Shown here one piece after another: positions 4,990 through 41,382 of a DNA stretch of 54,494 bases. Source of the stretch: Octopus sinensis (lineage: Eukaryota). The stretch spans positions 1 to 54,494 of the forward strand of contig NW_021835879.1 in assembly GCF_006345805.1 (NCBI RefSeq), written 5' to 3'. The stretch's first letter is position 1. Each line of letters begins with the position of its first letter. The position numbers were made by a program, and so were the translations under genes. Under the pieces are notes generated by a model. It was not told the origin of the DNA, did not search any database, and saw only the letters and a program-made list of their open reading frames with translations.

Positions 4990-5546
4990 ATGGTGGCTGC
5001 CCCCTCGTTATCGAGTATGGCCATTGCACGAAGCTTAATCAATGTTGTTATCGTGCAACGCCTGTGCAAGAAGATTTCTTTTAAAGTGAGGAAAGGCTGT
5101 GCACTGAGTCAATCCCACTCACTAAGCAACAGCAGCCATAATCCGAAAAGAGAACAAGTCAACATCATCGGTAACCACTGAGCCGCAGGTTTTATGTCGG
5201 AGTTATCCCAGTTACCTGAGTCACCTTCTCCTAAAAGGATGCCCTAACAAAGGCTGGGAGTCCTTCACTCCCAATTGTTTAAGCGCGCGATCGGGTATTC
5301 AGTCCGATTATTTCTATGTCCCCGCGCATGATACAGCCTTAAGACATTTATTGGACGCTGTTGACTCTCAAGAGTTCCTCCGCCCTTTGACGGGTTTTGT
5401 TTTTCATCCCGCAGGGTGTCCAATAAACACCCTCCTCACCAAGCAAACTTGGTGGGGTTGCCGGTTTAGTCGCCGACGACCATGCAACAGGTTGTATTGG
5501 GTTACATGTTGCCAGTAGCACTCGAAAGTGACCTGACATACATACA
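4990..5546 (-). mobile_element. Probable RTE-type LINE 5' UTR remnant
   Basis: GC-richer block between (CATA)n tracts. Minus strand has GGAGAAGGTGACTC...AAACCTGCGG and GGCAAC...CCTGTTGC...GTCG-loop-CGACTAA, which resemble RTE 5' UTR motifs as I recall them. No ORF. Confidence 0.5.
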
Positions 5547-5590
5547 TACATACATACATACATACATACATACATACATGCATACATACA

Positions 5591-5708
5591 TACGGCCATA
5601 TCACGCTGAATGCACCGGTTCTCGTCCGATCACCGAAGTTAAGCAACGTCAACCATAAGTGAGTATTTCGATGGGTGACCGATTGGAAAACCTAGGTGTT
5701 GTAAACAT
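5591..5708 (+). pseudogene. 5S rRNA-derived sequence (pseudogene or SINE3-like head)
   Basis: TACGGCCATATCACGCTGAATGCACCGGTTCTCGTCCGATCACCGAAGTTAAGCAACGTC matches the invertebrate 5S 5' half including box A. GATGGGTGACCG is box C-like and the 3' end reads GGTGTTGTAAAC. The first 3 nt are replaced by (CATA)n, the 3' half is diverged, and there is no oligo-T terminator. Confidence 0.9.
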
Positions 5709-5718
5709 CTCACACAAC

Positions 5719-5862
5719 AGGTGTAGGCGTGGCTGTGTGGTAAGAAGCCTGCTTCCTCAACAGATGGTTCTGGGTTCAGTGCTACTGCGTGGTACTTTGG
5801 GCAAGTGTATTCTACTATAACCTCGGGCCGACCAAAGCATTGTGAATAGATTTTATGGACGG

Positions 5863-6414: not shown

Positions 6415-6960
6415 TGGGGAGCTGGCAGAATCGTTAGCACGCCGGGTGCGTCTGTCGCTACGTTCTGAGTTCAAATTCCGCCGAGGTCGACTTTGCCTTT
6501 CATCCTTTCAGGGTCGATAAATTAAGTACCAGTTACGCATTGGGGTCGATGTAATCGACTTAATCCCTTTGTCTGTCCTTGTTTGTCCTCTCTTTGTTTA
6601 GCCCATTGTGAGTAGTAATGAAATAGGTATTCCGTCTGTCGCTACGTTCTGAGTTCAAATTCTGCCGAGGTCGACTTTGCCTTTCATCCTTTCGGGGTCG
6701 ATTAAATAAGTACCAGTTATGCACTGATGTCCATGTATGACTTAATCCCTTTGTCTGTCCTTGTTTGTTCACTCTATGTTTAGCCCCTTATGGGTAGTAA
6801 AGAAATAGGTATTTCATCTGCCGCTACCTTCTGAGTTCAAATTCCGCTGAGGTCAACTTTGCCTTTCAGCCTTTCGGGGTCGTTAAATTAAATACCAGTA
6901 ACGTACTGGGGTTGATCTGATCCAAAATTTCGGGCCTTGTGCCCAGAATAGAAAAGATTA
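6415..6960 (+). mobile_element. Tandem array of three SINE family A units (~183-bp period)
   Basis: The unit (g/a)tctg(t/c)cgctac(g/c)ttctgagttcaaatt recurs at 6450, 6634 and 6816. Confidence 0.92.
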
Positions 6961-7286: not shown

Positions 7287-7957
7287 AGAGAGTGAGAGCG
7301 TCTGTCTGCGTTTAACACCAAAAGCGATAAAAGTTTCACAAGCCTTGTTACGTGAGAATGTTAAAGTGAAGAGAAAATGAAAAATCACAATGATGAGCTC
7401 TCGAAATATCATTTTGTTAATGAGCGAGTGTCTCACTGCGCATGTGCAGTGCATATATATTATACATACACAAATAAATATGTGTATGTATATACATTAT
7501 GTATATATGCAAGGAAACATTCATTAACACAATGCTGCCGTTGATATTTATAATTATCTCTTTCTTTTTCCCTTCGTTAGCATACAGGTAATTTAATTGC
7601 CGACATCAATGCAATTATCTAAAGGTGACAACAGTCGTAATTAATGGCTAATTAGGCAAAAAGAGAAAAAAAAGGTATGTGCTAGAAAGGCAAACAGATA
7701 TTTTCGAAAACCTAAACGAAATTGTATAAGCATCACTTTCATCCCCCAATCTGCAATTTTCGAAAGAGTTTTCGAGAATGCGCTCCATAAATATCTATAG
7801 ATTGATATACATCTACATCTGCACGTCTCTCTCCACGTCTCTCTCCACCTCTCTCTCCACCTCTCTCTCCCCCTTTTCTCTCATTCTCTCTCTCTCTCTC
7901 TCTCTCTCCTCCATATATATGTATGTGTGTATATATGAATGTTTGATATATATAGGA

Positions 7958-8075
7958 CGTACTTTCGGTTTCCGTCTATTAAATCTACTGACGCGGTTTT
8001 AGTCCACCCCAGTCTATAGAGGACTGGCACAAGGTGACACAAAACCATGTGGTTGGAAACAAATTGTTACAACAC
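7958..8075 (-). mobile_element. SINE family B, diverged head fragment
   Basis: tttcggtttccgtctattaaatc...aaccatgtggttgg is the reverse of the family B 5' region. Confidence 0.6.
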
Positions 8076-8121
8076 ACACATACACACGCATATATATACA
8101 TATATATACATATATATGGCT

Positions 8122-8225
8122 TCTTTACAGATGAGGTGTAGCCTTTGGTGGATTGACTTAGTTTAATTTAACTTAATTAAGCTGGTTTGTCATTAAAAAC
8201 ACCGAAACAATGCATTGTCTAAAGA
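8122..8225 (+). ncRNA. Type I hammerhead ribozyme-like motif (one core substitution)
   Basis: Stem I TCTTTA/TAAAGA; core CAGATGA (canonical CTGATGA); stem II GGTGT/ACACC with an insert; GAAA; stem III palindrome ACAATGCATTGT; GUC triplet with C at 8219. Confidence 0.72.
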
Positions 8226-8528
8226 TGAATTAGGGTAAATGTTTTTAAATATTCTTTTAATTTCTGAATTACTACTACTTGGCGGTTTGAGTCCTGGCTG
8301 CTCTTTCTAGTGGGTCGAATGGCCTATTAAGGCCATTCCTCAATTGTTGTTGAATTTATATATATATATAATATATATATATATATATAATATATATATA
8401 TATAATCTAATCAATATAGAGTAGCAAAAAAATTCAAGAAAAAAATTCAAGAAAAATTTTCTGCAACCAGCGGTCAAGTGAGAAAATAGAAATAGTCACA
8501 GACAAATAATATATTCAACAAAATTAAT

Positions 8529-8780
<252 letters not shown>

Positions 8781-9007
8781 GTATACATTTATATATATAC
8801 ATACATACATGTGTGTGTGTGTTGTGTGTGTGTGTGTGTGTGTAAGGGGGATATTCGCTTTGCTCATCCTCTTATCATCAGCATGATCAACGTTTATATT
8901 TTCGCATCCCTTATATTTTCGGTTCAGTTTATACAACAAGCTATTCACGACATTTTCTTACGTTTGTATGAATAATATTTGGGAAATCCTTTTTATGCAT
9001 CACTCAC

Positions 9008-9200
9008 AGTTTCGTTAGACCGCCGGACGAAATGCTTTGCTTTGCGTATTCTGCCTCCCTACATTGTTAATTCAGATTACACCGAGGTCAAATTTGCCCC
9101 TGCAGCTTTCGGGGCCGAGACGATGATACAAATATAATACTGAGGTTGCTTGTGAGGACGAAACCTTTCAAAATTTTTGGCCTTGTGTTCAAATCAGAAC
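9008..9200 (+). mobile_element. SINE family A, diverged copy
   Basis: tcgttagaccgccggacgaaatgc...accgaggtcaaatttgcc...ctttcggggccga...tttggccttgtg. Confidence 0.7.
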
Positions 9201-9474
9201 AAAAATATTTTTCTATACATAAATATATATACAGACCCATGCATGTAGGGGTGGGCTTATTTTCATTCTAAAACACAAACTCGCACACGTATGCATACTG
9301 ATAATGGGTGGGTGCGGGGGACGAATATTATTCTCGTGGGAAAGACGTACCTGTTACAATTTCATTCTAACAGATTTATATACCTAAATATTTTTCAGGC
9401 ATCCTAGAATGGCCTACATACACTCGCATATACGTATGTGTGTGTATATTGTGTTATTGCGTAGTTATGATGTG

Positions 9475-9517
<43 letters not shown>

Positions 9518-9804
9518 GTATGTATATATGGGGGTGGGATGTGCGTTTTTGGTGTACATACATGTATCTATACACTGTGGTGTCTGTGAATGTAGCTAGA
9601 GGGTGTGGCCGAATGTAAGTGTGACATGCATGCCTTTCCCACGAGGACTGGTGTCGGGCATGAGACGAATGCAACCGAAAAATGATGGGGGAAAAGAACT
9701 GCTAGGTCGTGGTTTCGGTTCACAGAAAAACTACAGTAGCTCTTTGTTATTCTGAACACTGCGACTACAACACAACACTCGAAGACGACAAAAACAAGCA
9801 TGAA

Positions 9805-9838
9805 CAAGGAAGACGACAGACCAACAACAACAACATAC

Positions 9839-9913
<75 letters not shown>

Positions 9914-10371
9914 AAGAAGAAGAATGAACTGAGCATGCGGAATGATACTTCAACCATTTTGAAGTTCTTTCATAATCATCAACGCAGCATTAGATCCCTT
10001 GAGGTTGTTGTCTTCCATTACGAAATCAAGAATATAGTGTTTGTTCTTTTAGTAAACAACAAAACAAGAAGAAAAATCATAAACAACAATAACAACAATA
10101 ACAACCGCAACAACATTTTATACAAACCAGGACGACGGCGACGACAACAAAAAACAGCACTACTACTACTACTACTACTACTACCACTACTACTACTACT
10201 ACAACTACTGCTGCTGCTACTATCGCTAACACAGCTAGTATTTGTACCACCATGACTACCACCATAATGACAATAACATTAACAAATATACAAAGACACA
10301 ATAAGGAGATAAGGAAACTACTACAGCAGATACATGTGTTTCTATCTTTCTAAGTATGGGTATCATATATA

Positions 10372-10412
<41 letters not shown>

Positions 10413-10487
10413 CATGCATATAATGTGTGTGTATATATATATATATATGTACGTATGTATATACATATATATATGTATATGTATATA

Positions 10488-10524
<37 letters not shown>

Positions 10525-10627
10525 GCATATATATGGTGTTGTATATATATATATGTACGTATGTATATACAAATATATATATGTATATGTATATATATTG
10601 TATATATATATATATATATATAATATA

Positions 10628-10673
<46 letters not shown>

Positions 10674-11070
10674 TATATATATATAATATATATATGTAAA
10701 GGACTATAGTAGGTTACCATTATATTGGGCTGATGTGTATTATCAACTTGTTTTCCTTCTTCTTCTTCCTCTTCTTCTTTTTATTCCTCCTTCTGCTCCC
10801 CTTCTTTTTCCTTTTCTTCATTTTCTTCTGAGAGATAAAAACCAAAAACCAAGGATAGATACCTTACTGAATTTTAATTTTAATAAAAATTCTCTAGAGT
10901 TCGTGCGTATTCCTAAAAAGGAAAAATAAAGTAGTAGTAGTAGCAGTAGTAGTAGTAGTAGTAGTAGTAAGAATAATCATAATTATTATTGTTATGATTA
11001 ATATATAAAAAATAGTAACAAAAAGTAACAAAATTAACATCATTGATAAGGAAATGACTACTACTACCGG

Positions 11071-11789: not shown

Positions 11790-13070
11790 ATCTGACTTCT
11801 TCTTCTCCTTCTCCTTCTCCTTCTTCTTCTTCTTCTTCTTCTTCTTCTTCTTCTTTCTTCTTCTTCTTCTTCTTCTTCTTCTTCTCCTCCTCCTTCTCCT
11901 CCTCCTCCTCCTTCTTCTTCTTCTTCTTCTTCTTCTTCTTTTTCTTCTTCTTCTTCTTTTTCTTCTTCTTCTCCTCCTCCTCCTCCTTCTTCTTCTTGTT
12001 CTTCTTGTTCTTGTTCTTGTTCTTCTTTTTCTTCTTCTTGTTCTTGTTCTTGTTCTTGTTCTTCTCTTCTTGTTCTTCTCCTTCTTCTTCTTCTCCTTCT
12101 TCTTCTTCTTCTCCTTCTCCTTCTCCTTCTCCTTCTTCTCCTTCTTCTTCTTCTTCTTCTTCTTCTTCTTTTCTTCTCCTTCTCCTTCTTCTTCTTCTTC
12201 TTCTTCTTCTTCTCCTTCTCCTTCTTCTTCTTCTTCTTGTTCTTGTTCTTGTTCTTCTTCTCTTCTTGTTCTTGTGCTTCTCCTTCTTCTCCTCTTCTCC
12301 TTCTTCCTCTTCTTCTTCTTCTTCTTCTCCTTCTCCTTCTCCTTCTTCTTCTCCTTCTTCTTCTTCTTCTTCTTCTTGTTCTTCTTCTCCTTCTTCTTCT
12401 TCTTCTTCTTGTTCTTCTTCTCTTCTTGTTCTTCTCCTCCTTCTTCTCCATCTTCTCCTTCTTTTTCTTCTTCTTCTTCTTCCCTCCTTCTTCTCCTCCT
12501 CCTCCTCCTCCTCTTTCTTCTCCTTCTTCTTCTTTTTCTTCTTCTCCTCCTCCTCCTCCTCCTTCTTCTTCTTGTTCTTCTTGTTCTTGTTCTTCTTTTT
12601 CTTGTTCTTCTTTTTCTTCTTGTTCTTGTTCTTCTTCTCCTTCTTCTCTTCTTCTTCTTCTCCTTCTTCTCCTTCTTCTCCTTCTTCTTCTTCTTCTTCT
12701 CCTTCTCCTTCTCCTTCTCCTTCTTCTCCTTCTTCTCCTTCTTCTTCTTCTCCTTCTTCTTCTTCTCCTTCTCTTCTTGTTCTTGTTCTTGTTATTGTTC
12801 TTCTTCTTCTCCTTCTTCTCCTTCTTCTTCTCCTTCTTCTTCTTCTTCTTCTGCTTCTCCTTCTCCTTCCTTCTTCTTCTTCTTCTTCTTCCTTCTTCTT
12901 CTTGTTCTTCTTCTTCTTCTTCTCTTCTTGTTGTTCTCCTCCTTCTTCTCCTCCTCCTCCTTCTTCTTGTTCTTCTTGTTCTTGTTCTTGTTCTTGTTCT
13001 TTTTCTTCTTGTTCTTTTTCTTCTTCTTCTCCTCCTCCTCCTTCTCCTCTTCTTCCTCTTCTTCTTCTTG
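11790..13070. repeat. ~1.28-kb degenerate (CTT)n/(GAA)n polypyrimidine-polypurine tract
   Basis: Plus strand is almost only C/T with interspersed TTG triplets. The 222-454 aa ORFs here are artefacts. Confidence 0.97.
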
Positions 13071-30590: not shown

Positions 30591-31057
30591 TTATGTATGT
30601 ATATATATATATGTGTGTGTGTATATGTGAGTGTGTATGTATGTTTATATGTATGTGTGTGCGTGTGTAAGCATATATATATACAAATGCACATCAGGGT
30701 ATTTGTAAAAACAATCATAATGAAAAGGGTGTAAAATAACGGTTGCATATTATATGATTTACAGATCTGAAAACCAACAAACCAAAACAATGCTGAAAGG
30801 AAGCAATTCCAAAATACGAAGAATTTAGTAAAAGGCGTCGGCTACGAAATATTTTTAGATTCTTTCAATTTATTTTTAAAATCAAAATAATGCATTCTTT
30901 CGTCTTAGAAGTTGGTTTGCAAGCTTCCTTGAAGTGAACTCGTGTGACCCTCTCGAGATACAGTATAATACAACCTGATACATTCATGCCGAATAGCAAC
31001 TCCATTTCAGACGATGACATATATTCATATATACATGCATACATATATATAAATGGG

Positions 31058-31092
<35 letters not shown>

Positions 31093-31105
31093 CATATATA
31101 TATAC

Positions 31106-31166
<61 letters not shown>

Positions 31167-31544
31167 TACATATATATATATGTGCATGTATATATATATA
31201 TATACATATATGTATATATATGTATATATAAATAAAATATCTATACATATATCTATCTACATATGTACATACACACACACGTATGCATGTACATATGCAC
31301 ACACGCGGACACACACACACACACACACACACGCGCGCGGACACACACACACACACACTCACATACGCATATTTTCATGATGTGGGAATATTCAAGATTC
31401 AATATTCCCGTTCATTTATTCTTTGTAGACATTGGTAAAAGTCGCAAAGAATTCCTGTAGCACTCTCAATGCCTCGATGAGACGAACTGAAAGGCGTTGT
31501 GTCGTTGGTTACCTGGCCTTGATGAATCGTCTGATCCGAGCACC

Positions 31545-31685
31545 AAAGAAGAAAACTAATTGGCCGCCCGGAACATCCGAAATATGTACCAGTATGGAAG
31601 ATTGGTGCAGCTACTTCAAGAATTTGACCACTACTGACTGAGTATTCTGGGACTTAGTGAAATGTGCTGGAAGGGTTAAAGGTGC
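31545..31685 (+). mobile_element. RTE-type LINE endonuclease N-terminal fragment
   Basis: RNIRNMYQYGRLVQLLQEFDHY*LSILGLSEMCWKG resembles the WNVRTMY...ILGLSExRW motif of RTE APE domains. Confidence 0.72.
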
Positions 31686-32738
31686 CTTGTCGTGTCTGCG
31701 CTTGTACTCTTTCTGCGCTTGTACTTTTCTACGCCTGTACTGTTTCTGCGTAAGGCTACCACGAGCGCTAATGATATGAGTCATGGTTTTGACTTTTCTC
31801 CCACACATTCCACGGATGTTCATTGCACTTGTGTGCTATATATTTGTTTTCTCTGGGATGATATTCAATGCCTGGCCCTGGGCAACGATGATGAAACTTT
31901 CAGCCCCCTTTTAAAGGTCACCTTTTCTAAGCTATATCCATGAAACTTCATAATCTTTTAAGTTGTTAGTTTCGCGTCGGACTGACATGTAATTCCAAAT
32001 GGAGCAGTGTTTGTTCTCTCGTCGGCTATTCGTGATTGGAATTCATCAGAACACTCAAGTCGAATTTTGGTAAATCCTTCTGCGTTGGCAGGCCTTGTTC
32101 GCTGTTTACCAGATATTTCTTCTCTCACCGCCGATGCACTCCTCTACGCTTATCCAACTTCGTCTACCTTTACTCCTCTTCAAGTACATCCAAGGGGAGA
32201 GAGTACCATGTGTTGTCCTCAGCTCTCGGGTTGTGCGTTTCAGTTGGTCAATCTCCGCTCGCGTCCATTTCAGAATGGGTCTATTAAAACGAACAGCAGC
32301 AACAACCCCTATATTGATAGCAACCACAAGAAGATTGCGGGGCTTGAAACATGCAGCAATGACCTTGTCTTTCACTTCTCTGTGCAAGATATTGTCCAGC
32401 TCCAGGCTCTCACATTATGATACTTGTAGCCATCATCATCTCGGTCTCCCATGTGCTTTGCATTTGGCAATTCTCTGCCCTTGCAATCTGTTCTTTTCCC
32501 CCGTTTCAAAGTGAGCACAGCACACTTTGAGATTCCGAATTCCTCTTCTGTGTCCTTGTTGCACATCTGTACATTCTCACTCAGTCTTTCCACTTCAGTT
32601 TCTGTTTTGCTAACAATTTTAATAATCCATGATAAGATAGGTGAGACGAGGTTCATTCTGCCACGACTCGAGAGCGCGTAAACTTTGCATACAGCTACAG
32701 AAAGTAGGCTATAACAAATAGCAAAGGTGAACAACAAT
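31686..32738 (-). mobile_element. R4/Dong-clade non-LTR retrotransposon fragment B (RT domain 4 to zinc knuckle), decayed
   Basis: Minus strand: SPLLFVIA; SKTETEVERL..EFGISKCAVLTLKRGK..LP..GYKY; AINIGVVAAVRF..ILKWTRAEIDQL; YLKRSKGRRSWISVEEC; AESFIIVAQGQAL; MCGRKVKTMTHIIS; YKRRHDK. An internal ~18-bp tandem triplication lies at ~31695-31750. Confidence 0.88.
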
Positions 32739-32752
32739 CTATTATTATTGTA

Positions 32753-33829
32753 ATTGAGTGAGAGAGCAAAGAAGCTCATTCTATGCATTCCCAGATTACA
32801 CACGCAAATTCACAGGTAAAATATGTATTTAAAAATTAATAAATAAATAAATTCATGAATGGATGTTGTTTTCACAGCGATAATGCTCTTCTCAGTACAT
32901 GAGTCGTTCCAGTTAACACCCTGTTAACACCCCTGTAGGGATGGTAAACCTGGTATCCTTTGCAAATAGGTTTTAGTACCTTTTTTTAAATCATTCCTAG
33001 AGATCCTACAATCACTGATACTGTAGTCGCCTTGAGATGCCACATTTTTTCAATTTCTATTAGCAAGTCTTTATATTTACTGATCTTGTCAAATTCTTTC
33101 GTCGTTATATTCGCAAGAATACTCATGTCAATTAGTAAACACATATTTTTTTGTCTGATCTTTTATAATAATATCCGGCTTATTAGCTTTTATAATTTTG
33201 TCGCTATGTAAGGGGGAGTCCCATAGAATCGACACATTTTCTCCCTCAGTCACAGCTTAAGGATGGTGTTTATACCATTTGTCAGCGGTTTTGATTTTAT
33301 AATGTCGACATATTGTCCAATGTAAATACTGACCGACTCTGTCATGTCTTGCTTTATATTCTGCAGGTGCTAAGACTCTACATCCTGAGATTAGGAGGTC
33401 TATAGTTTCAATTTCATCATTACAGAATCGGCATTTTGGGTCAGCTCCATTTTTTTTATCACATTGGCTTAGTAGTTCCGGGTTAATAAGCTTTGGTCTT
33501 GAGCAGCTAATATGAAACCTTCACTCTCTGCTTTTAACCCTGAGCTTCGTAACCATTGGTGCAGGTGTTTCTGGTCGACATCAGCTTGTTTGCTACGGGC
33601 CACATACTTGCCATGCAGAGGTTACTGTTCCCATCTGTTAGCTAATTTTTCATGTGCTTTAGTCTTTGCAATTAATTTCATTTTCTTGGCAGCATCAGTT
33701 GGCGCATTTCCTTCAGCCTCATTAATCTGGAAGGTATCTAAGAGATCAGTAGCGAATTTTTTGCTCTCTTTCAGAATAGATTGAAATTTTTTCGGTCTTT
33801 TATGTTTTTTAGCAAGTTTTAGCATCTTT
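32753..33829 (-). mobile_element. R4/Dong-clade non-LTR retrotransposon fragment A: 5'-truncated 3' end with zinc knuckle, restriction-like endonuclease, 3' UTR and (AAT) tail
   Basis: Minus strand: PLHGKY..HQWLRSSGLKAESEGFILAAQDQSL; CRFCNDEIETIDLLISGC (H to L); EYKARHDRVGQYLHWTIC; ANKPDIIIKD..LIDMS..KEFDKISKYKDL..EKMWHLK. Stop at 32872-32874 and a ~120-nt 3' UTR; (AAT)n on both sides. Confidence 0.93.
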
Positions 33830-33848
33830 ATTATTATTATTATTATTA

Positions 33849-33910
<62 letters not shown>
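33830..33910. repeat. (ATT)n/(TAA)n microsatellite between stacked insertions
   Basis: Direct reading. Confidence 0.97.
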
Positions 33911-33913
<3 letters not shown>

Positions 33914-34425
33914 GAGTGAGAGAGCAGTTCATGCCATCAAAGTGACACTGGGATAAAATATACGAAGCCCACTATACCCATCATGACTACCCGTCTGATA
34001 AGGGTACACCAGGCACATGCACCTCAACCATTTGTGCGCGACATAGTGATCTCATATCAAGATAAACAGCGCATGACCTTGCAGGTGGGGCCCAGTTACA
34101 ATTTTCTTCTGGTCGAGTAACCCACCCTGCTCAAAAGGTCCTTGAATAAGGATTGTTTAAAGATGTTGAACGAACCAGCCATGTTTCCAAAGGTGAATTA
34201 TCCAAACCTCTAAGAATTCCTCTCAACACACGGCTATGATGCTCCCCCACTACTTCTGCTCGTGATCAGAGATGCACATATCGTCAGCCACTAAGGGACA
34301 TGCTCAACTGGTTACGGTCAAACAACTGACAAGCAAATCTGTGGTATTGAGCAGAATATTTGCTGTAGCCCATCTTTTATACCAAGACAAAACAATGTAC
34401 ATGATAACACTTCCAATCACTTAAG
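33911..34425 (-). mobile_element. ~510-bp apparently non-coding element embedded in (TAA)n, sharing its 3' terminus with fragment A
   Basis: Flanked on both sides by (ATT)n. Plus-strand start ATTGAGTGAGAGAGCA is identical to 32753-32768. No ORF in the track. Confidence 0.75.
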
Positions 34426-34523
34426 ATTATATATTATTATTATTATTATATATTATTATTATTATTACTATTATTATTATTTTTATCATATTATTATTAT
34501 CATTATTATTATTATTATCATCA

Positions 34524-34554
<31 letters not shown>

Positions 34555-34707
34555 CTACTATTATTATTATTATTATTATTATTATATTATTATTATTTTA
34601 TTATTATTCTTATTATTAGTAGTATTAGTATTATTATTATCATTATTATTATTATTATTATTATTATATTATTATTATTACTATTATTTTATTATTATTA
34701 TTATTAT

Positions 34708-34744
<37 letters not shown>

Positions 34745-34745
34745 C

Positions 34746-34785
<40 letters not shown>

Positions 34786-34852
34786 CTATTATTATTATTA
34801 TTATTATTATATTATTATTATTATATCATATTATTATTATTATTTTATATTA

Positions 34853-34886
<34 letters not shown>

Positions 34887-34888
34887 CA

Positions 34889-34920
<32 letters not shown>

Positions 34921-35232
34921 CATTATTATTATTTATTATTAATTATATCATATATTATTATTTTATTATTATTATTATCATTATATTATTATTATTATTA
35001 TGTATTATTATTAGTATACTATTATTATTATTATTATTATTATCATATTATTATGATTATTATTATTATTATTATCATTATTATTATTATTATTAATTAT
35101 TATTATTATCATTATTATTATTATTATTATTCTTATTATTATTATTATTATTATATATTATCATCATTATTATTATATTATTATTATTATTATTATTATT
35201 ATTATCATTATATATTATTATTATTATTATCA

Positions 35233-35271
<39 letters not shown>

Positions 35272-35430
35272 TATTACTATTATTGATTATTATATATCAT
35301 TATTTTATTATTATTATTATTATTATTATTACTTATTATTTATTATTATTAAATCATTATTATATTATTATTATTATTATGAAATCATCATCATTATATT
35401 ATTATTATTATTATTTTATTATTATTATTA
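34426..35430. repeat. ~1-kb degenerate (ATT)n array
   Basis: Direct reading; poly-I/Y/L ORFs are artefacts. Confidence 0.97.
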
Positions 35431-35834
35431 TTCTCTCGCCAGAGTTACCCTTTCTTTTAATTCTTTTTCTCATAGTCGTAGTACTGGTCGTCATCACCAT
35501 CCTCTTCGGTGCCATTGTCTGTCTGTCTCTTCCACCACCTCCTCATCTCCTCCTCCTCCTCCTCCACCCACCTCATCATCATCATCTCTGTCTTCGGTTT
35601 TTCCATTATTCCCACCGTCGTCATTGTTGTTGTTTACGACGTCGTATTTTGCATCACCATCATCACCATGCCTTATGGCATATTGTGTTTGCATAACGAA
35701 GAACCTCGTCCCTACAAATCTAAATCATGTTTGCAGACCAGCCCCGGGAGTGCGTCTAATATGCAAATCGGTATATCCAACAACTTGACACCACTGTATG
35801 TGGTGGCTGTATAAGCAATGTGTTCGGAGGTAAT

Positions 35835-35904
35835 AGTGAGTTAGATGAGTGCTGATGAAAGGGCAATAACCCCCGAAATATGGCGTATGCACTCATTACT
35901 CACT
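35835..35904 (+). ncRNA. Degenerate type I hammerhead motif (probably inactive)
   Basis: AGTGAGT..TGAGTG-CTGATGA-AAGGG-CAATAA-CCCCC-GAAA-TATGGCGTAT-G-CACTCA..ACTCACT. Stem I is extended, but H17 is G and there are A-C mismatches at the base of stem II. Confidence 0.65.
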
Positions 35905-36681
35905 TTCGTCTTCGATCACATGGTCTGTTTACATCTGACGTCTCGATATGAAATGTTGCAGCGAAAATCGGCGCTGACTGTAAATTCTATGGAACTTCTG
36001 TAGAAATAACCATAACAAAATAATGTAAGAACACCCAATAGAATGTGATAGTGTGTTATGAAAACATTGAATATACTTTACAGAATATTGTGTTTGCCTA
36101 ACGAAGTAGCATGTACCTACACAATCGTTGTCCCCTTCGTCGCCATCATTATCATATCTCGGTCGTCTGCTTAGCCGTCATGGCCACTGTCATCATGGCC
36201 GTCGTTTTCGTTTCCGTACTCGCAGTCGATATCATCATCATCATCGTCGTCGTCGTCGTCGTCGTCGTCCTCATTATAATCTTCGCCCCCATTTTAATGA
36301 TTATAATCACCATCGTCTTCTATTCAATCCGTTGTAAAAATAAACAGAACACTATTTCAAAGACCGTCGACTTTGTTCAAATTTCTCTTCAACTAAAATC
36401 TATTTCCGTTTAAGTAACCACCCATTCATTGTGTTACGAGAATATATAATATCCAATCATAAATATATATGCATATATAATTTCACACACGCACACATAC
36501 GCACTCACATCACATGCACTCACAAATACACATAGGTATATGTGTATACATGTATTTGTATAGATATACATATAAATACACACACACACACATACACATA
36601 TATATATTGTGCAAGGATGCAAGCGCACGTATATATGCATAAATACACACACACATATATACATATATATGCGTATATATA

Positions 36682-40191: not shown

Positions 40192-41382
40192 TTGGGTTGG
40201 GAACTAAGTTCTATCCGTTTTGTAAATTTAAATTTTTTAAAAGGTTTAATAAAAAATAACAACTAATTAATCAATAATGTTTTCCCCTTGTTGTTTAAAA
40301 CTTCTCAACGTTCAACAAGATTTTCAGTACCTCATTGGTAGAAATGACCCGAGTTTGACTCGAAACATTGATGCTACCAAGCTCTCAATTCTGCATCAGT
40401 ATTGAACGAAACTCCGCGCATAGCATTTGAAAGAGATCAAAGAAGTGGAAATCCGTTGGTGCCAAATCAGGAGAGTACGGCGGGTGTGGCAGCACTTCCC
40501 AGCCATGCGTTTGAATGGGTTCCTTGGCCATATTGGCGTTGTCGCGCAGCAGAAGAGCTCCATGCTGCATTATAGGCGTTTTCTCTTGAATAGTCGTGTT
40601 GAGTCGTTCCATCTGTTGAATAGAGTTCCGCGTTGATCGATTGGTTCCGTTCAAGCAATTCGTAATGGAAAATCCCTTCGCAGTCCCACCATACGCACAA
40701 CATCGCTTTACGCGGATGAAGATCTTGTTTCACGCGCCGTGTCGCTTGTTTACCGGGGCTAAGCCATTGCTTACGCTGCTTCATGTTGATGTACAGGCAC
40801 CATTTTCCGTCGCCACTAACGATTTGGTAAGGAAATCGTTGCTTGTGTCCATGAGTTGAGCGGTGACGAGCAAGCAAACCAGCGGAGATTGTGGCTCATT
40901 GATTTTTGTTGTTGTTGTCACTTAAAGCATGCGGAACCTATGCTCAATACATCTGAACTGTTCCCATCTAGGGAAGATGCTTCGCTATAGCAGTTCCCTT
41001 TTTGCTTGACGAGAATTTTCGTGCAAAAGATGGTTTAATCGCTCTTCATTAAACTGAACTGGACGGTCAGAACGAGGTGCGTTTTTGAGGTCAAAATTGA
41101 GGTCCATTTTTGAACTTGGCATACCCATCACGAGCGGTTCTTTCAGCTATGGCACCCTCTTCATACACAGCACAAATATCGCAAGCAGCTTTTGCGGCGT
41201 TACAATCTTGATTAAAAGCAAAAAGAAGGAGGTGTCGAAAATGGTCGTTTTTCTTAACTTGACATTCCATTTTAATGATCTGAAAATAAAAAATAACTAA
41301 AATTAATTAGAAAAAACACCCAAAGAAACAAAAACAAAGTAGATTCCAGAATTAAAAAAAACGGGGGGATCTAGTTGCCAAC

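What the first reader, a model, noticed from the sequence alone, without database searches (positions are those of the whole stretch)
31686..35430. Stack of three same-orientation insertions in (TAA)n: a Dong-like microsatellite-targeting retrotransposon nest
Seen: on the minus strand the order is ~1 kb (AAT)n, a 510-bp element, (AAT)n, R4-clade fragment A (zinc knuckle, RLE, 3' UTR), a short AAT tail, then R4-clade fragment B starting abruptly at RT domain 4. A and B both cover the zinc-knuckle region but differ in sequence, so they are separate insertions of different subfamilies. Established: Dong elements of the R4 clade target (TAA)n repeats. Inference: each insertion leaves TAA at its 5' flank and so recreates the target for the next, building a polarised tandem nest and possibly feeding the large TAA array.
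Basis: partly seen in the sequence, partly recalled or inferred. Interest (0 to 1): 0.78.

Follow-up and report, generated by a model that had tools for sequence, protein, structure and literature searches.

The report
Dong-like retrotransposon pile-up in TAA repeat
Three dead pieces of TAA-repeat-seeking "Dong-like" jumping genes lie head to tail in one long TAA microsatellite; this family does the same in many animals, so the finding is real but ordinary.

Summary
On the minus strand the order is: about 1 kb of (AAT)n, a 513-bp non-coding element, (AAT)29, fragment A, a 16-nt AAT-rich tail, then fragment B.

- **Fragment A:** a 5'-truncated ORF end carrying the CCHC knuckle, a PD-D-K restriction-like endonuclease and a 117-nt 3'UTR.
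- **Fragment B:** starts at RT motif SPLLF and runs to the CCHC/RHD region.
- **Separate lineages:** A and B belong to two different lineages of one family of RLE-bearing LINEs. Full-length relatives are about 1,200 aa with no AP endonuclease and no N-terminal zinc finger, and R2 proteins are their only solved relatives.
- **TAA targeting across the family:** 45 of 58 element 3' ends and 28 of 52 5'-truncated starts abut sense-strand (TAA)n.
- **Stacks elsewhere:** same-strand stacks recur in at least seven unrelated loci, including a Penaeus locus with about 5 kb of TAA.

This matches published Dong/R4 behaviour. Strand-specific targeting is enough to explain the shared orientation.

Not shown: a formal RT phylogeny against R4, Dong, NeSL and HERO references, and any "feeding" of the 1-kb array.

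The one mildly new item is the 513-bp element. It shares an exact 16-nt 3' terminus with A, so it may be a non-autonomous partner. Interest is low.

The parts
34426..35432 (-). Long degenerate (AAT)n = (TAA)n microsatellite; the target array lying 5' of the stack
   Evidence: TRF: period 3, 339 copies, 85% matches, 7% indels. By eye, the sequence holds no non-TAA islands.
33913..34425 (-). 513-bp non-coding element ('el510') ending in TGCTCTCTCACTCA followed by (AAT)n. Candidate Dong-dependent non-autonomous element, or the long-3'UTR end of a third subfamily.
   Evidence: It has no ORF similarity to the family profile; all hmmsearch scores were negative. It has no tRNA, 5S or 7SL head. It shares an exact 16-mer with the 3' end of A. 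No other copy exists in the window.
33828..33912 (-). (AAT)28.7, 97% pure; the tail of el510 and/or leftover target between el510 and A
   Evidence: TRF.
32755..33827 (-). Fragment A: a 5'-truncated, decayed A-type Dong-like copy. It contains the linker, the CCHC knuckle (33433..33380), the restriction-like endonuclease motifs KPD/D/K..KY (33181..33060), the stop codon (32874..32872) and a 117-nt 3'UTR.
   Evidence: It aligns by tblastn to residues 891-1207 of the L001 full-length ORF. Best database hit E=1.7e-99, 68% identity. The family profile aligns to the CCHC and PD-D-K motifs of solved R2 proteins 9nl3 and 9dou.
32753..32768 (-). 3'-terminal box TGCTCTCTCACTCAAT of fragment A (the identical box in el510 is at 33911..33926)
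   Evidence: There are only two exact matches in the window, both at an element/TAA junction. The box corresponds to the 'TTGCTCACC' box that precedes the conserved 3'UTR hairpin in relatives.
32739..32754 (-). Short tail ATTACAATAATAATAG between the 3' end of A and the 5' end of B
   Evidence: Read directly from the sequence.
31671..32738 (-). Fragment B: an older e4-type Dong-like copy truncated at both ends. It runs from RT motif B (SPLLF, 32730..32713) through the decayed YMDD (32630..32622) to the CCHC/RHD remnant (about 31810..31690). It has no endonuclease domain, 3'UTR or tail.
   Evidence: By phmmer it scores 120-153 bits against e4-type proteins and at most 31 bits against A-type proteins. 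By tblastn, P0221 residues 109-436 match 32623..31671 with 7 stops. It has no PDB hit.
31695..31750 (-). 17-bp x 3.4 tandem duplication inside the YKRRHD region of B
   Evidence: TRF and translation.

Best explanation
The region is a graveyard of at least three independent target-primed reverse-transcription insertions into one (TAA)n microsatellite. The elements belong to a Dong-like family of non-LTR retrotransposons that carry a restriction-like endonuclease.

**How the family works**
- The protein has an N-terminal region without zinc fingers, then RT, a CCHC knuckle and a PD-D-K endonuclease.
- It recognises and nicks (TAA)n in one strand orientation. It then primes cDNA synthesis on an RNA whose 3' end carries or adjoins (UAA)n.
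- Reverse transcription often aborts, which gives 5'-truncated copies.
- Each insertion splits the array and leaves TAA on both sides, so the site stays a target. Every later copy must land in the same orientation.

**Likely order of events (inferred from decay)**
1. B, the e4-type copy and the most decayed, inserted first.
2. A, the A-type copy, inserted three TAA units upstream of B.
3. The 513-bp non-coding element inserted upstream of A.

B later lost its 3' part by deletion.

**Shown and inferred**
- Shown: the homology, the motifs, the family-wide TAA flanks, and the recurrent same-strand stacks.
- Inferred: the order of events, the enzymology (by analogy with R2 and Dong), and the dependence of the 513-bp element on Dong.
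For: - **Anatomy and homology:**
- **Full-length relative (L001 e1, 1211 aa):** RVT_1 spans residues 507-769 and zf-RVT is present, with no AP endonuclease. Its only PDB relatives are R2 proteins; 9nl2 matches at E=2e-37 over residues 444-1113. The C-terminal profile aligns to the CCHC and KPD..D..K.KY motifs of R2.
- **3' flanks:** 45 of 58 evaluable 3' ends have sense-strand (TAA)>=3 within 400 bp, against 5 of 58 with the antisense repeat. The background in the same loci is 14% sense and 2.6% antisense. The TAA run typically starts 77-170 bp after the ORF end.
- **5' flanks:** 28 of 52 5'-truncated copies have sense TAA within 250 bp upstream. It often ends within 1-30 bp of the first aligned residue. 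TAA is therefore the target, not only a tail.
- **B's lineage also sits in TAA:** seen in L084, L085 and L086.
- **Same-strand head-to-tail stacks elsewhere:** L001 holds five elements separated by (TAA)4-11. Others are L015, L035/44, L052 and L081/82, L084 and L086, and the Penaeus indicus locus L087, which has about 5 kb of TAA and a nested fragment.
- **Literature:** Dong/R4 elements have RT plus an REL-endonuclease, no N-terminal zinc finger, and a (TAA)n target in insects, molluscs and cnidarians (PMC7998251). Dong, DongAg and DongBg target TAA (PMC3812793).
Against: - No tree with R4, Dong, NeSL or HERO references could be built, so the clade name is inferred.
- A few loci hold opposite-strand Dong-like fragments (L040, L043, L047). 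In L040 the opposite-strand copy carries its own sense-strand TAA run.
- About a fifth of 3' ends lack TAA. Some have other repeats such as (TGA)n or (CAA)n, or have no repeat.
- B has no 3' junction, so its own insertion into TAA is inferred from its 5' flank and from its relatives.
- The copy number and mobility of the 513-bp element are unknown.
- A and the 513-bp element both lack the covarying 3'UTR hairpin that relatives carry. Their 3' ends are therefore atypical for the family.
Confidence: 0.85

Rival explanations
1. One-event chimera. The segment el510-(AAT)29-A was made in a single TPRT event. The reverse transcriptase copied the 3' part of an A-type RNA, then jumped end-to-end onto the (UAA)n tail of an el510 RNA. 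On this reading the stack holds two events, not three.
For: The (AAT)29 junction is much purer (97%) than the flanking 1-kb array (85%), as expected for newly synthesised sequence. End-to-end template jumping is documented for the related R2 enzyme in vitro (my own knowledge, not checked here). Full-length elements in L001 are separated by only (TAA)4-11.
Against: A short, pure tract is also what a fresh 3' tail or a short leftover of target would look like. A and B clearly differ in age, so independent serial hits do occur at this site. No second copy of the el510-TAA-A junction is available for comparison.
Confidence: 0.1
2. Tails, not targets. The elements merely end in (TAA)n, as the Drosophila I factor does. 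The arrays grew by slippage from those tails after essentially random insertion, so the nest is a secondary product of microsatellite expansion and recombination.
For: Every complete 3' end carries its own TAA run. Long arrays flank elements in the window and in L087. LINE tails are a known source of microsatellites (PMC3812793).
Against: Sense-strand TAA directly abuts the random 5' break-points of truncated copies in 28 of 52 cases. It does so even for isolated copies such as L085. A tail cannot explain this. Published Dong data show TAA at both junctions, and the Bombyx Dong 5' ribozyme releases a 21-nt fragment of 7 TAA repeats upstream of the element (PMC3774820).
Confidence: 0.05
3. The 513-bp element is not a retrotransposon insertion. 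It is ordinary spacer DNA, or a fragment of an unrelated repeat, caught between two TAA arrays. The nest would then contain only A and B.
For: It has no coding similarity to the family, no pol III head, no other copy in the window and no significant fold (z=-1.4).
Against: An exact 16-nt identity with the 3' terminus of A sits in the same position and strand, immediately before (AAT)n. About 2.5e-5 such copies are expected by chance. The box is homologous to a conserved 3'UTR box in relatives.
Confidence: 0.1
4. The mechanism is the same but the clade differs. The family is a TAA-specific lineage of HERO or NeSL, or a new RLE clade, rather than R4/Dong.
For: No reference-based tree was possible. 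HERO contains some microsatellite-specific families, and a NeSL-related group (Togen) targets (TG)n (PMC4640811). Single-sequence Pfam scans did not detect the N-terminal Myb/SANT domain. Rfam found no HDV-like ribozyme in the full-length relatives.
Against: Target, orientation, architecture (no N-terminal zinc finger, a conserved W-[TS]-x-E-E N-terminal motif) and taxon range (cnidarians, crustaceans, echinoderms) all match the published description of R4/Dong (PMC7998251). That paper needed HHpred to see the Myb domain, so one search is a weak negative.
Confidence: 0.12

Closest known systems
Dong (Bombyx mori), DongAg (Anopheles gambiae) and DongBg (Biomphalaria glabrata): (TAA)n-specific members of the R4 clade
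   Same: Single ORF with RT followed by a CCHC knuckle and a restriction-like endonuclease. No AP endonuclease and no N-terminal zinc finger. Orientation-specific insertion into (TAA)n with TAA on both flanks. Frequent 5' truncation (PMC7998251, PMC3812793).
   Different: No sequence-level comparison with the named elements was possible. The window copies lack the 3'UTR hairpin that their own relatives share. The 5' HDV-like ribozyme shown for Bombyx Dong (PMC3774820) cannot be present in these 5'-truncated copies, and Rfam did not detect one in the full-length relatives.
R2 elements (R2Bm, R2Tg; solved structures 8gh6, 9dou, 9nl2, 9nl3)
   Same: They are the only solved relatives. RT, linker, CCHC and PD-D-K endonuclease are collinear with the family (E=2e-37; motif alignment). 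The same TPRT logic applies.
   Different: R2 targets one site in 28S rDNA and has N-terminal zinc finger and Myb domains. This family targets a microsatellite and shows no zinc finger in its N-terminus.
Cephalopod and other invertebrate 'LINE/Dong-R4' families annotated by RepeatMasker (e.g. Octopus vulgaris: 5 recently active families, 1129 insertions; PMC13282606, PMC8967140)
   Same: The same class label would very probably be given to A and B. These families are abundant in marine invertebrates.
   Different: The host of the window is unidentified. No repeat library was available to match the copies to named families.
SIDEs (internally deleted non-autonomous R2 derivatives) and SINEs that share a 3' end with their partner LINE
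   Same: el510 is short and non-coding. It shares only the 3'-terminal box plus the repeat tail with a coding element beside it. Internally deleted derivatives of this family do exist (P0040, L076).
   Different: el510 has no pol III head and no detectable remnant of the ORF. Its copy number is unknown.
Tandem insertions of other site-specific LINEs (e.g. Utopia in U2 genes, PMC4640811)
   Same: Repeated hits on a repeated target give head-to-tail arrays.
   Different: Here the target is a microsatellite that regenerates on both flanks, so stacks can mix subfamilies and grow without limit.

Membership tests
RLE-bearing non-LTR retrotransposons (R2 group sensu lato) | Reverse transcriptase domain of the non-LTR type | tested here: met
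   Fragment B carries decayed RT motifs B (SPLLF) and C (YMDD, now SWII) and aligns to RT-containing relatives. The full-length relative e1 has RVT_1 at E=2e-29.
RLE-bearing non-LTR retrotransposons (R2 group sensu lato) | CCHC knuckle followed by a PD-(D/E)xK restriction-like endonuclease, C-terminal to the RT | tested here: met
   Fragment A has C-x2-C-x7-(H>L)-x4-C, RHD, KPD, D and K..KY. The family profile aligns to the same motifs in R2 structures 9nl3 and 9dou. e1 aligns to 9nl2 through residue 1113.
RLE-bearing non-LTR retrotransposons (R2 group sensu lato) | No N-terminal AP (EEP) endonuclease | tested here: met
   Pfam finds only RVT_1 and zf-RVT in the 1211-aa relative. This cannot be tested on the window copies themselves because they are 5'-truncated.
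R4 clade / Dong | Orientation-specific insertion into (TAA)n, with TAA on both flanks | tested here: met
   In the window, all three elements have sense-strand AAT runs 5' of them, and two also 3'. Across the family, 45 of 58 3' ends and 28 of 52 truncated 5' ends have sense TAA, against 5 and 3 with the antisense repeat. The e4-type lineage shows the same.
R4 clade / Dong | N-terminus without zinc fingers but with a diverged Myb/SANT-like domain (PMC7998251) | tested here: inconclusive
   No C-x2-4-C / H-x3-5-H pattern is visible in the N-termini of e1, e2 or e4. A conserved W-[TS]-x-E-E ... W-R-E motif is visible by eye. Single-sequence Pfam scans give no Myb/SANT hit. The published detection needed HHpred.
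R4 clade / Dong | RT phylogeny groups with R4 (U29445) and Dong (L08889) rather than R2, NeSL, HERO or CRE | not testable with these tools
The only related result is that the sole solved relatives are R2 proteins.
R4 clade / Dong | HDV-like self-cleaving ribozyme at the 5' end (shown for Bombyx Dong and Ascaris R4, PMC3774820) | tested here: inconclusive
   The Rfam scan of L001, L084 and L086 found nothing at E<=0.1. Such ribozymes are pseudoknotted and often missed. The feature does not apply to the 5'-truncated window copies.
Non-autonomous partner of a LINE (SINE / SIDE), for the 513-bp element | 3' end shared with the autonomous partner | tested here: met
   An exact 16-mer, TGCTCTCTCACTCAAT, lies at both 3' termini.
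Non-autonomous partner of a LINE (SINE / SIDE), for the 513-bp element | Pol III-type head (tRNA, 5S or 7SL), for a SINE | tested here: not met
   ARAGORN and Rfam found nothing in 33913..34425.
Non-autonomous partner of a LINE (SINE / SIDE), for the 513-bp element | Many dispersed copies with the same termini and TAA flanks | not testable with these tools
   No eukaryotic genome collection can be searched by DNA. Exact ORF look-ups were not on record. There are no other copies in the window or in 87 loci.

The most novel reading that the evidence does not exclude
The 513-bp element may be a non-coding, non-autonomous retrotransposon that borrows the Dong machinery through a 14-16-nt 3'-terminal box plus a (UAA)n tail. 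This would be a parasite of an R4/Dong-clade LINE in a lineage that has dispensed with the family's conserved 3'UTR hairpin. More broadly, head-to-tail Dong arrays might act as read-through transcription units that are cut into unit-length RNAs by 5' ribozymes.
Probability: 0.22. Interest if true: 0.4.

Novelty: new member of a known kind. Interest (0 to 1): 0.2.

Why it matters
The main value is for annotation. The region is a textbook example of how a microsatellite-specific LINE builds same-strand stacks. It also shows that kb-scale (TAA)n tracts in this and other invertebrate genomes are likely to hide Dong-like fragments. That matters for repeat masking, assembly of TAA-rich regions and microsatellite marker design.

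It adds nothing to mechanism beyond what is published for Dong/R4. Three small leads could be followed up:
- a possible non-autonomous partner (the 513-bp element);
- a covarying 3'UTR hairpin shared by the family but missing from the window copies;
- 60-68% amino-acid identity between copies in very distant phyla.

Tried and rejected
1. **Pfam on the stitched A and B translations.** Nothing useful came back because the copies are too decayed.
2. **Word-index protein search with B.** No hits. B was classified instead by local phmmer against relatives of the L001 e4 element.
3. **PDB search with A or B alone.** No hits. The full-length relative and the family profile did hit R2.
4. **Idea that el510 is a decayed ORF end.** By eye it showed 'LGIKDG..IP' and 'VLRGIL'. 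The idea was rejected because all profile scores were negative.
5. **Idea that el510 is a tRNA-, 5S- or 7SL-derived SINE.** Rejected.
6. **Other copies of el510, or the host record.** Three exact ORF look-ups found nothing on record, so the host organism remains unidentified. My first guess of a cephalopod is unsupported. The Penaeus indicus copy is only 67% identical at the DNA level.
7. **HDV-like ribozymes in full-length relatives via Rfam.** None found.
8. **N-terminal Myb/SANT domain via Pfam.** Not detected.
9. **Reference sequences or alignments from papers.** PMC309301 and PMC4400214 are not held. The only supplement listed for PMC13282606 is a 6.4-kb docx, which I did not open.
10. 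**Single-sequence folds of the 3' ends.** Not significant.
11. **My earlier impression that no opposite-strand copies exist.** Corrected: L040, L043 and L047 have them.
Full report
**Observation**

I read 30800-36500 on the minus strand and ran Tandem Repeats Finder on the whole window.
- a degenerate (AAT)n array at 35432..34426 (339 copies, 85% matches);
- a 513-bp unique segment at 34425..33913;
- a 97%-pure (AAT)28.7 tract at 33913..33828;
- fragment A at 33827..32755;
- a 16-nt tail, ATTACAATAATAATAG;
- fragment B from about 32738 to about 31671.

Three-frame translation shows the content of each fragment.
- **Fragment A:** the C-terminal third of a LINE ORF. It holds ...PLHGKY...ESEGFILAAQDQ..., a CCHC knuckle (CRFC-x7-L-x4-C, the His now mutated), RHD, KPDIIIKD, LLIDMS and K..KYKDL. 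The ORF ends ...VLTGTTHVLRRALSL*, followed by a 117-nt 3'UTR.
- **Fragment B:** begins inside RT motif B (..SPLLF..). It passes a decayed YMDD (ATGGATTAT, now SWII) and ends in a decayed knuckle plus AQKEYKRRHD.

B then simply stops, inside a 17-bp x 3.4 tandem duplication. It has no endonuclease domain, UTR or tail.

None of the three pieces has another copy in the window.

**Homology**

- Fragment A found 285 proteins. The best had E=1.7e-99 and 68% identity, with 60-65% identity to annotated proteins of Penaeus indicus and Clytia hemisphaerica and 53-54% to those of Asterias amurensis and Oculina patagonica.
- The best cluster is from the jellyfish Rhopilema esculentum and includes a 1221-aa member.
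- One hit led to locus L001, a 698-kb ENA contig that carries an intact 1211-aa ORF.
- That ORF has RVT_1 at residues 507-769, a weak zf-RVT match and no AP endonuclease.
- Its only solved relatives are R2 retrotransposon proteins. 9nl2 matches at E=2e-37, aligned from the RT through residue 1113.
- A profile of the C-terminal domain aligns to the CCHC motif and the KPD...D...K.KY endonuclease motifs of R2.
- A corresponds to residues 891-1207 of this ORF and B to about 697-1043.
- In the overlap they are only 28% identical.
- B was too decayed for the word-indexed search. Locally it matches the fourth element of L001 ('e4', 36% identical to e1). Against 120 database relatives of e4 it scores 120-153 bits, compared with at most 31 bits against the A-type set.

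A and B are therefore independent insertions from two lineages of one family. B carries 7 stops in its best HSP and has only 30-45% identity to its nearest relatives. A has 4 stops and up to 68% identity. That B is the older copy is an inference from these numbers.

**Is TAA really the target?**

I fetched 80 metagenome loci encoding relatives of the A-type C-terminus. I also fetched long loci for e4-type relatives and for a Penaeus indicus copy.
- **3' ends:** 45 of 58 evaluable ends have (TAA)>=3 on the sense strand within 400 bp, typically starting 77-170 bp after the ORF end. Only 5 have the antisense repeat. Background in the same loci is 14% sense and 2.6% antisense.
- **5' ends:** a repeat tail alone would not prove targeting, since the Drosophila I factor also ends in TAA. 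However, 28 of 52 5'-truncated copies also have sense TAA just upstream, often ending within a few bases of the first aligned codon. This holds for isolated copies such as L085 as well.
- **B's lineage:** the e4-type lineage behaves the same way (L084, L085, L086).

**Stacks elsewhere**

- L001 is a head-to-tail array of five elements. Three are essentially full length, and they are separated only by (TAA)4, (TAA)6 and (TAA)11.
- Same-strand pairs occur in L015, L035/44, L052 and L081/82 and in L084 and L086.
- In Penaeus indicus (L087) a full-length element sits between about 3.7 kb and about 1.3 kb of degenerate TAA. A 270-bp same-strand fragment is nested in the upstream array.
- Opposite-strand neighbours are rare (L040, L043, L047). 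In L040 the arrangement is a tail-to-tail (TAA)n(TTA)n junction, so each copy still follows its own TAA strand.

The window's nest is the normal signature of this family. Its polarity follows directly from strand-specific target recognition.

**Comparison with the literature**

- R4/Dong elements are described as RT plus REL-endonuclease elements without N-terminal zinc fingers and with a diverged Myb/SANT-like N-terminal domain. [quoted passage not shown]
- Dong, DongAg and the snail element DongBg are listed as TAA-specific (PMC3812793).
- Bombyx Dong has a 5' HDV-like ribozyme whose upstream cleavage product is a 21-nt run of 7 TAA repeats (PMC3774820).
- Dong-R4 families are abundant and recently active in Octopus (PMC13282606).

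The family studied here matches on architecture, target, orientation and taxon range. Three things could not be done:
- **Tree:** no R4, Dong, NeSL or HERO reference sequence was obtainable, so no tree was built. This matters because HERO also includes some microsatellite-specific families (PMC4640811).
- **Myb domain:** single-sequence Pfam scans did not detect the Myb-like domain. A conserved W-[TS]-x-E-E motif is visible by eye.
- **Ribozyme:** Rfam found no ribozyme in the full-length relatives.

I therefore call the elements 'Dong-like' and give R4-clade membership high but not complete confidence.

**The 513-bp element**

- It is non-coding, with negative scores against the family profile in all six frames.
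- It has no tRNA, 5S or 7SL head.
- It does not fold better than shuffled sequence.
- It ends with TGCTCTCTCACTCAAT, exactly the last 16 nt of fragment A, in the same strand and immediately before (AAT)n. These are the only two occurrences in the window.
- The box corresponds to the 'TTGCTCACC' box that, in relatives, precedes a conserved 3'UTR hairpin.
- That hairpin covaries: 6 of 9 pairs show compensatory changes across 14 elements.
- Both A and the 513-bp element stop just where the hairpin would begin and go straight into TAA. Their lineage therefore seems to use a different, shorter 3' end.

Two readings remain open. The 513-bp piece could be a non-autonomous element that borrows this 3' end. 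It could instead be the 5'-truncated end of a third subfamily with an unusually long 3'UTR. Deciding between them needs a census of the host genome, which these tools cannot do.

**'Feeding' the array**

There is no evidence for this inference. Tails in relatives range from 9 to more than 60 bp. The window carries other kb-scale microsatellites with no Dong nearby, for example (CTT)427 at 11796-13069. A long array is simply a larger target. The purity contrast between the 86-bp tract (97%) and the 1-kb array (85%) is compatible with three things:
- a freshly made tail;
- a one-event template-jump chimera of el510 and A;
- ordinary length-dependent microsatellite dynamics.

**Verdict**

The caveats are the untested phylogeny, the unsupported 'feeding' idea, the 3' truncation of B and the unknown nature of the 513-bp element. 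These are dead copies of a known kind of element behaving as published, so interest is low. The host organism was not identified.

Noticed in passing
window 5588-5707 (+): Full-length 5S rRNA match (76 bits against a gathering score of 38), immediately after an (ACAT)n run. It could be a gene, a pseudogene or a 5S-derived SINE head.
   Followed up: no
window 6451-6912: A 182-bp unit repeated 2.5 times in tandem (87% matches). It contains a B-box-like GAGTTCAAATTCC and looks like a tRNA-related SINE in tandem. ARAGORN finds no tRNA.
   Followed up: no
window 11796-13069 and throughout: The window is extremely rich in microsatellites, with 128 TRF rows in 54 kb. These include a 1.27-kb (CTT)n and several 300-460-bp AT and ATAC arrays. 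None is associated with Dong fragments.
   Followed up: partly
window 40467-40877 (-): A 136-aa ORF that looks by eye like a mariner/Tc1 transposase fragment (...WCLYINMKQRKQWL...VWWDCEGI.HYELL...).
   Followed up: no
window 31365-31670: About 300 bp of unique sequence lies 3' of fragment B, where its endonuclease domain should be. It has no similarity to the family or to anything else fetched. A deletion or replacement took place here.
   Followed up: partly
L001 1-16858 (ENA ERZ25067903, 698-kb contig): Head-to-tail array of five Dong-like elements of two lineages separated by (TAA)4-11. The 5'UTRs of e3 and e4 are 82% identical although their ORFs are far more diverged: e4 is only 36% identical to e1, against 54% for e3.
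   Followed up: partly
P0040; L076 367-1485: Internally deleted derivatives that join the N-terminal region directly to the CCHC-endonuclease end and lack the RT. P0040 is an open 403-aa ORF. These resemble R2 'SIDE' elements.
   Followed up: no
L003, L007, L008, L013, L016, L023, L032, L033, L045, L053, L075, L087, L001 e2/e3 (3'UTRs): A conserved 3'UTR stem-loop (..CCYWAGG-stem-loop-stem-CCGG..) lies 45-60 nt before the (TAA)n. Six of 9 pairs show compensatory changes. It is probably the RNA element recognised by the protein, and it is absent from the window copies.
   Followed up: partly
L087 (Penaeus indicus GCA_018983055.3, JAGYIC010000007.1): A full-length Dong-like element at 7300-10882 is embedded in about 5 kb of degenerate (TAA)n. 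A 270-bp same-strand fragment is nested at 5505-5774.
   Followed up: yes
L085 7962-9926: An e4-type copy flanked by TAA on both sides sits among ORFs with dsRNA-binding and adenosine-deaminase domains. It appears to lie within an ADAR-like gene.
   Followed up: no
Fragment A is 60-68% identical at protein level to copies in a jellyfish (Rhopilema), a shrimp (Penaeus) and a hydrozoan (Clytia). That is high for such distant hosts, so horizontal transfer or strong conservation is possible.
   Followed up: no
L040 around 1050-1090: A (TAA)n run directly abuts a (TTA)n run, with an opposite-strand Dong-like fragment beyond it. Two copies sit tail to tail, each with its own sense-strand TAA.
   Followed up: partly
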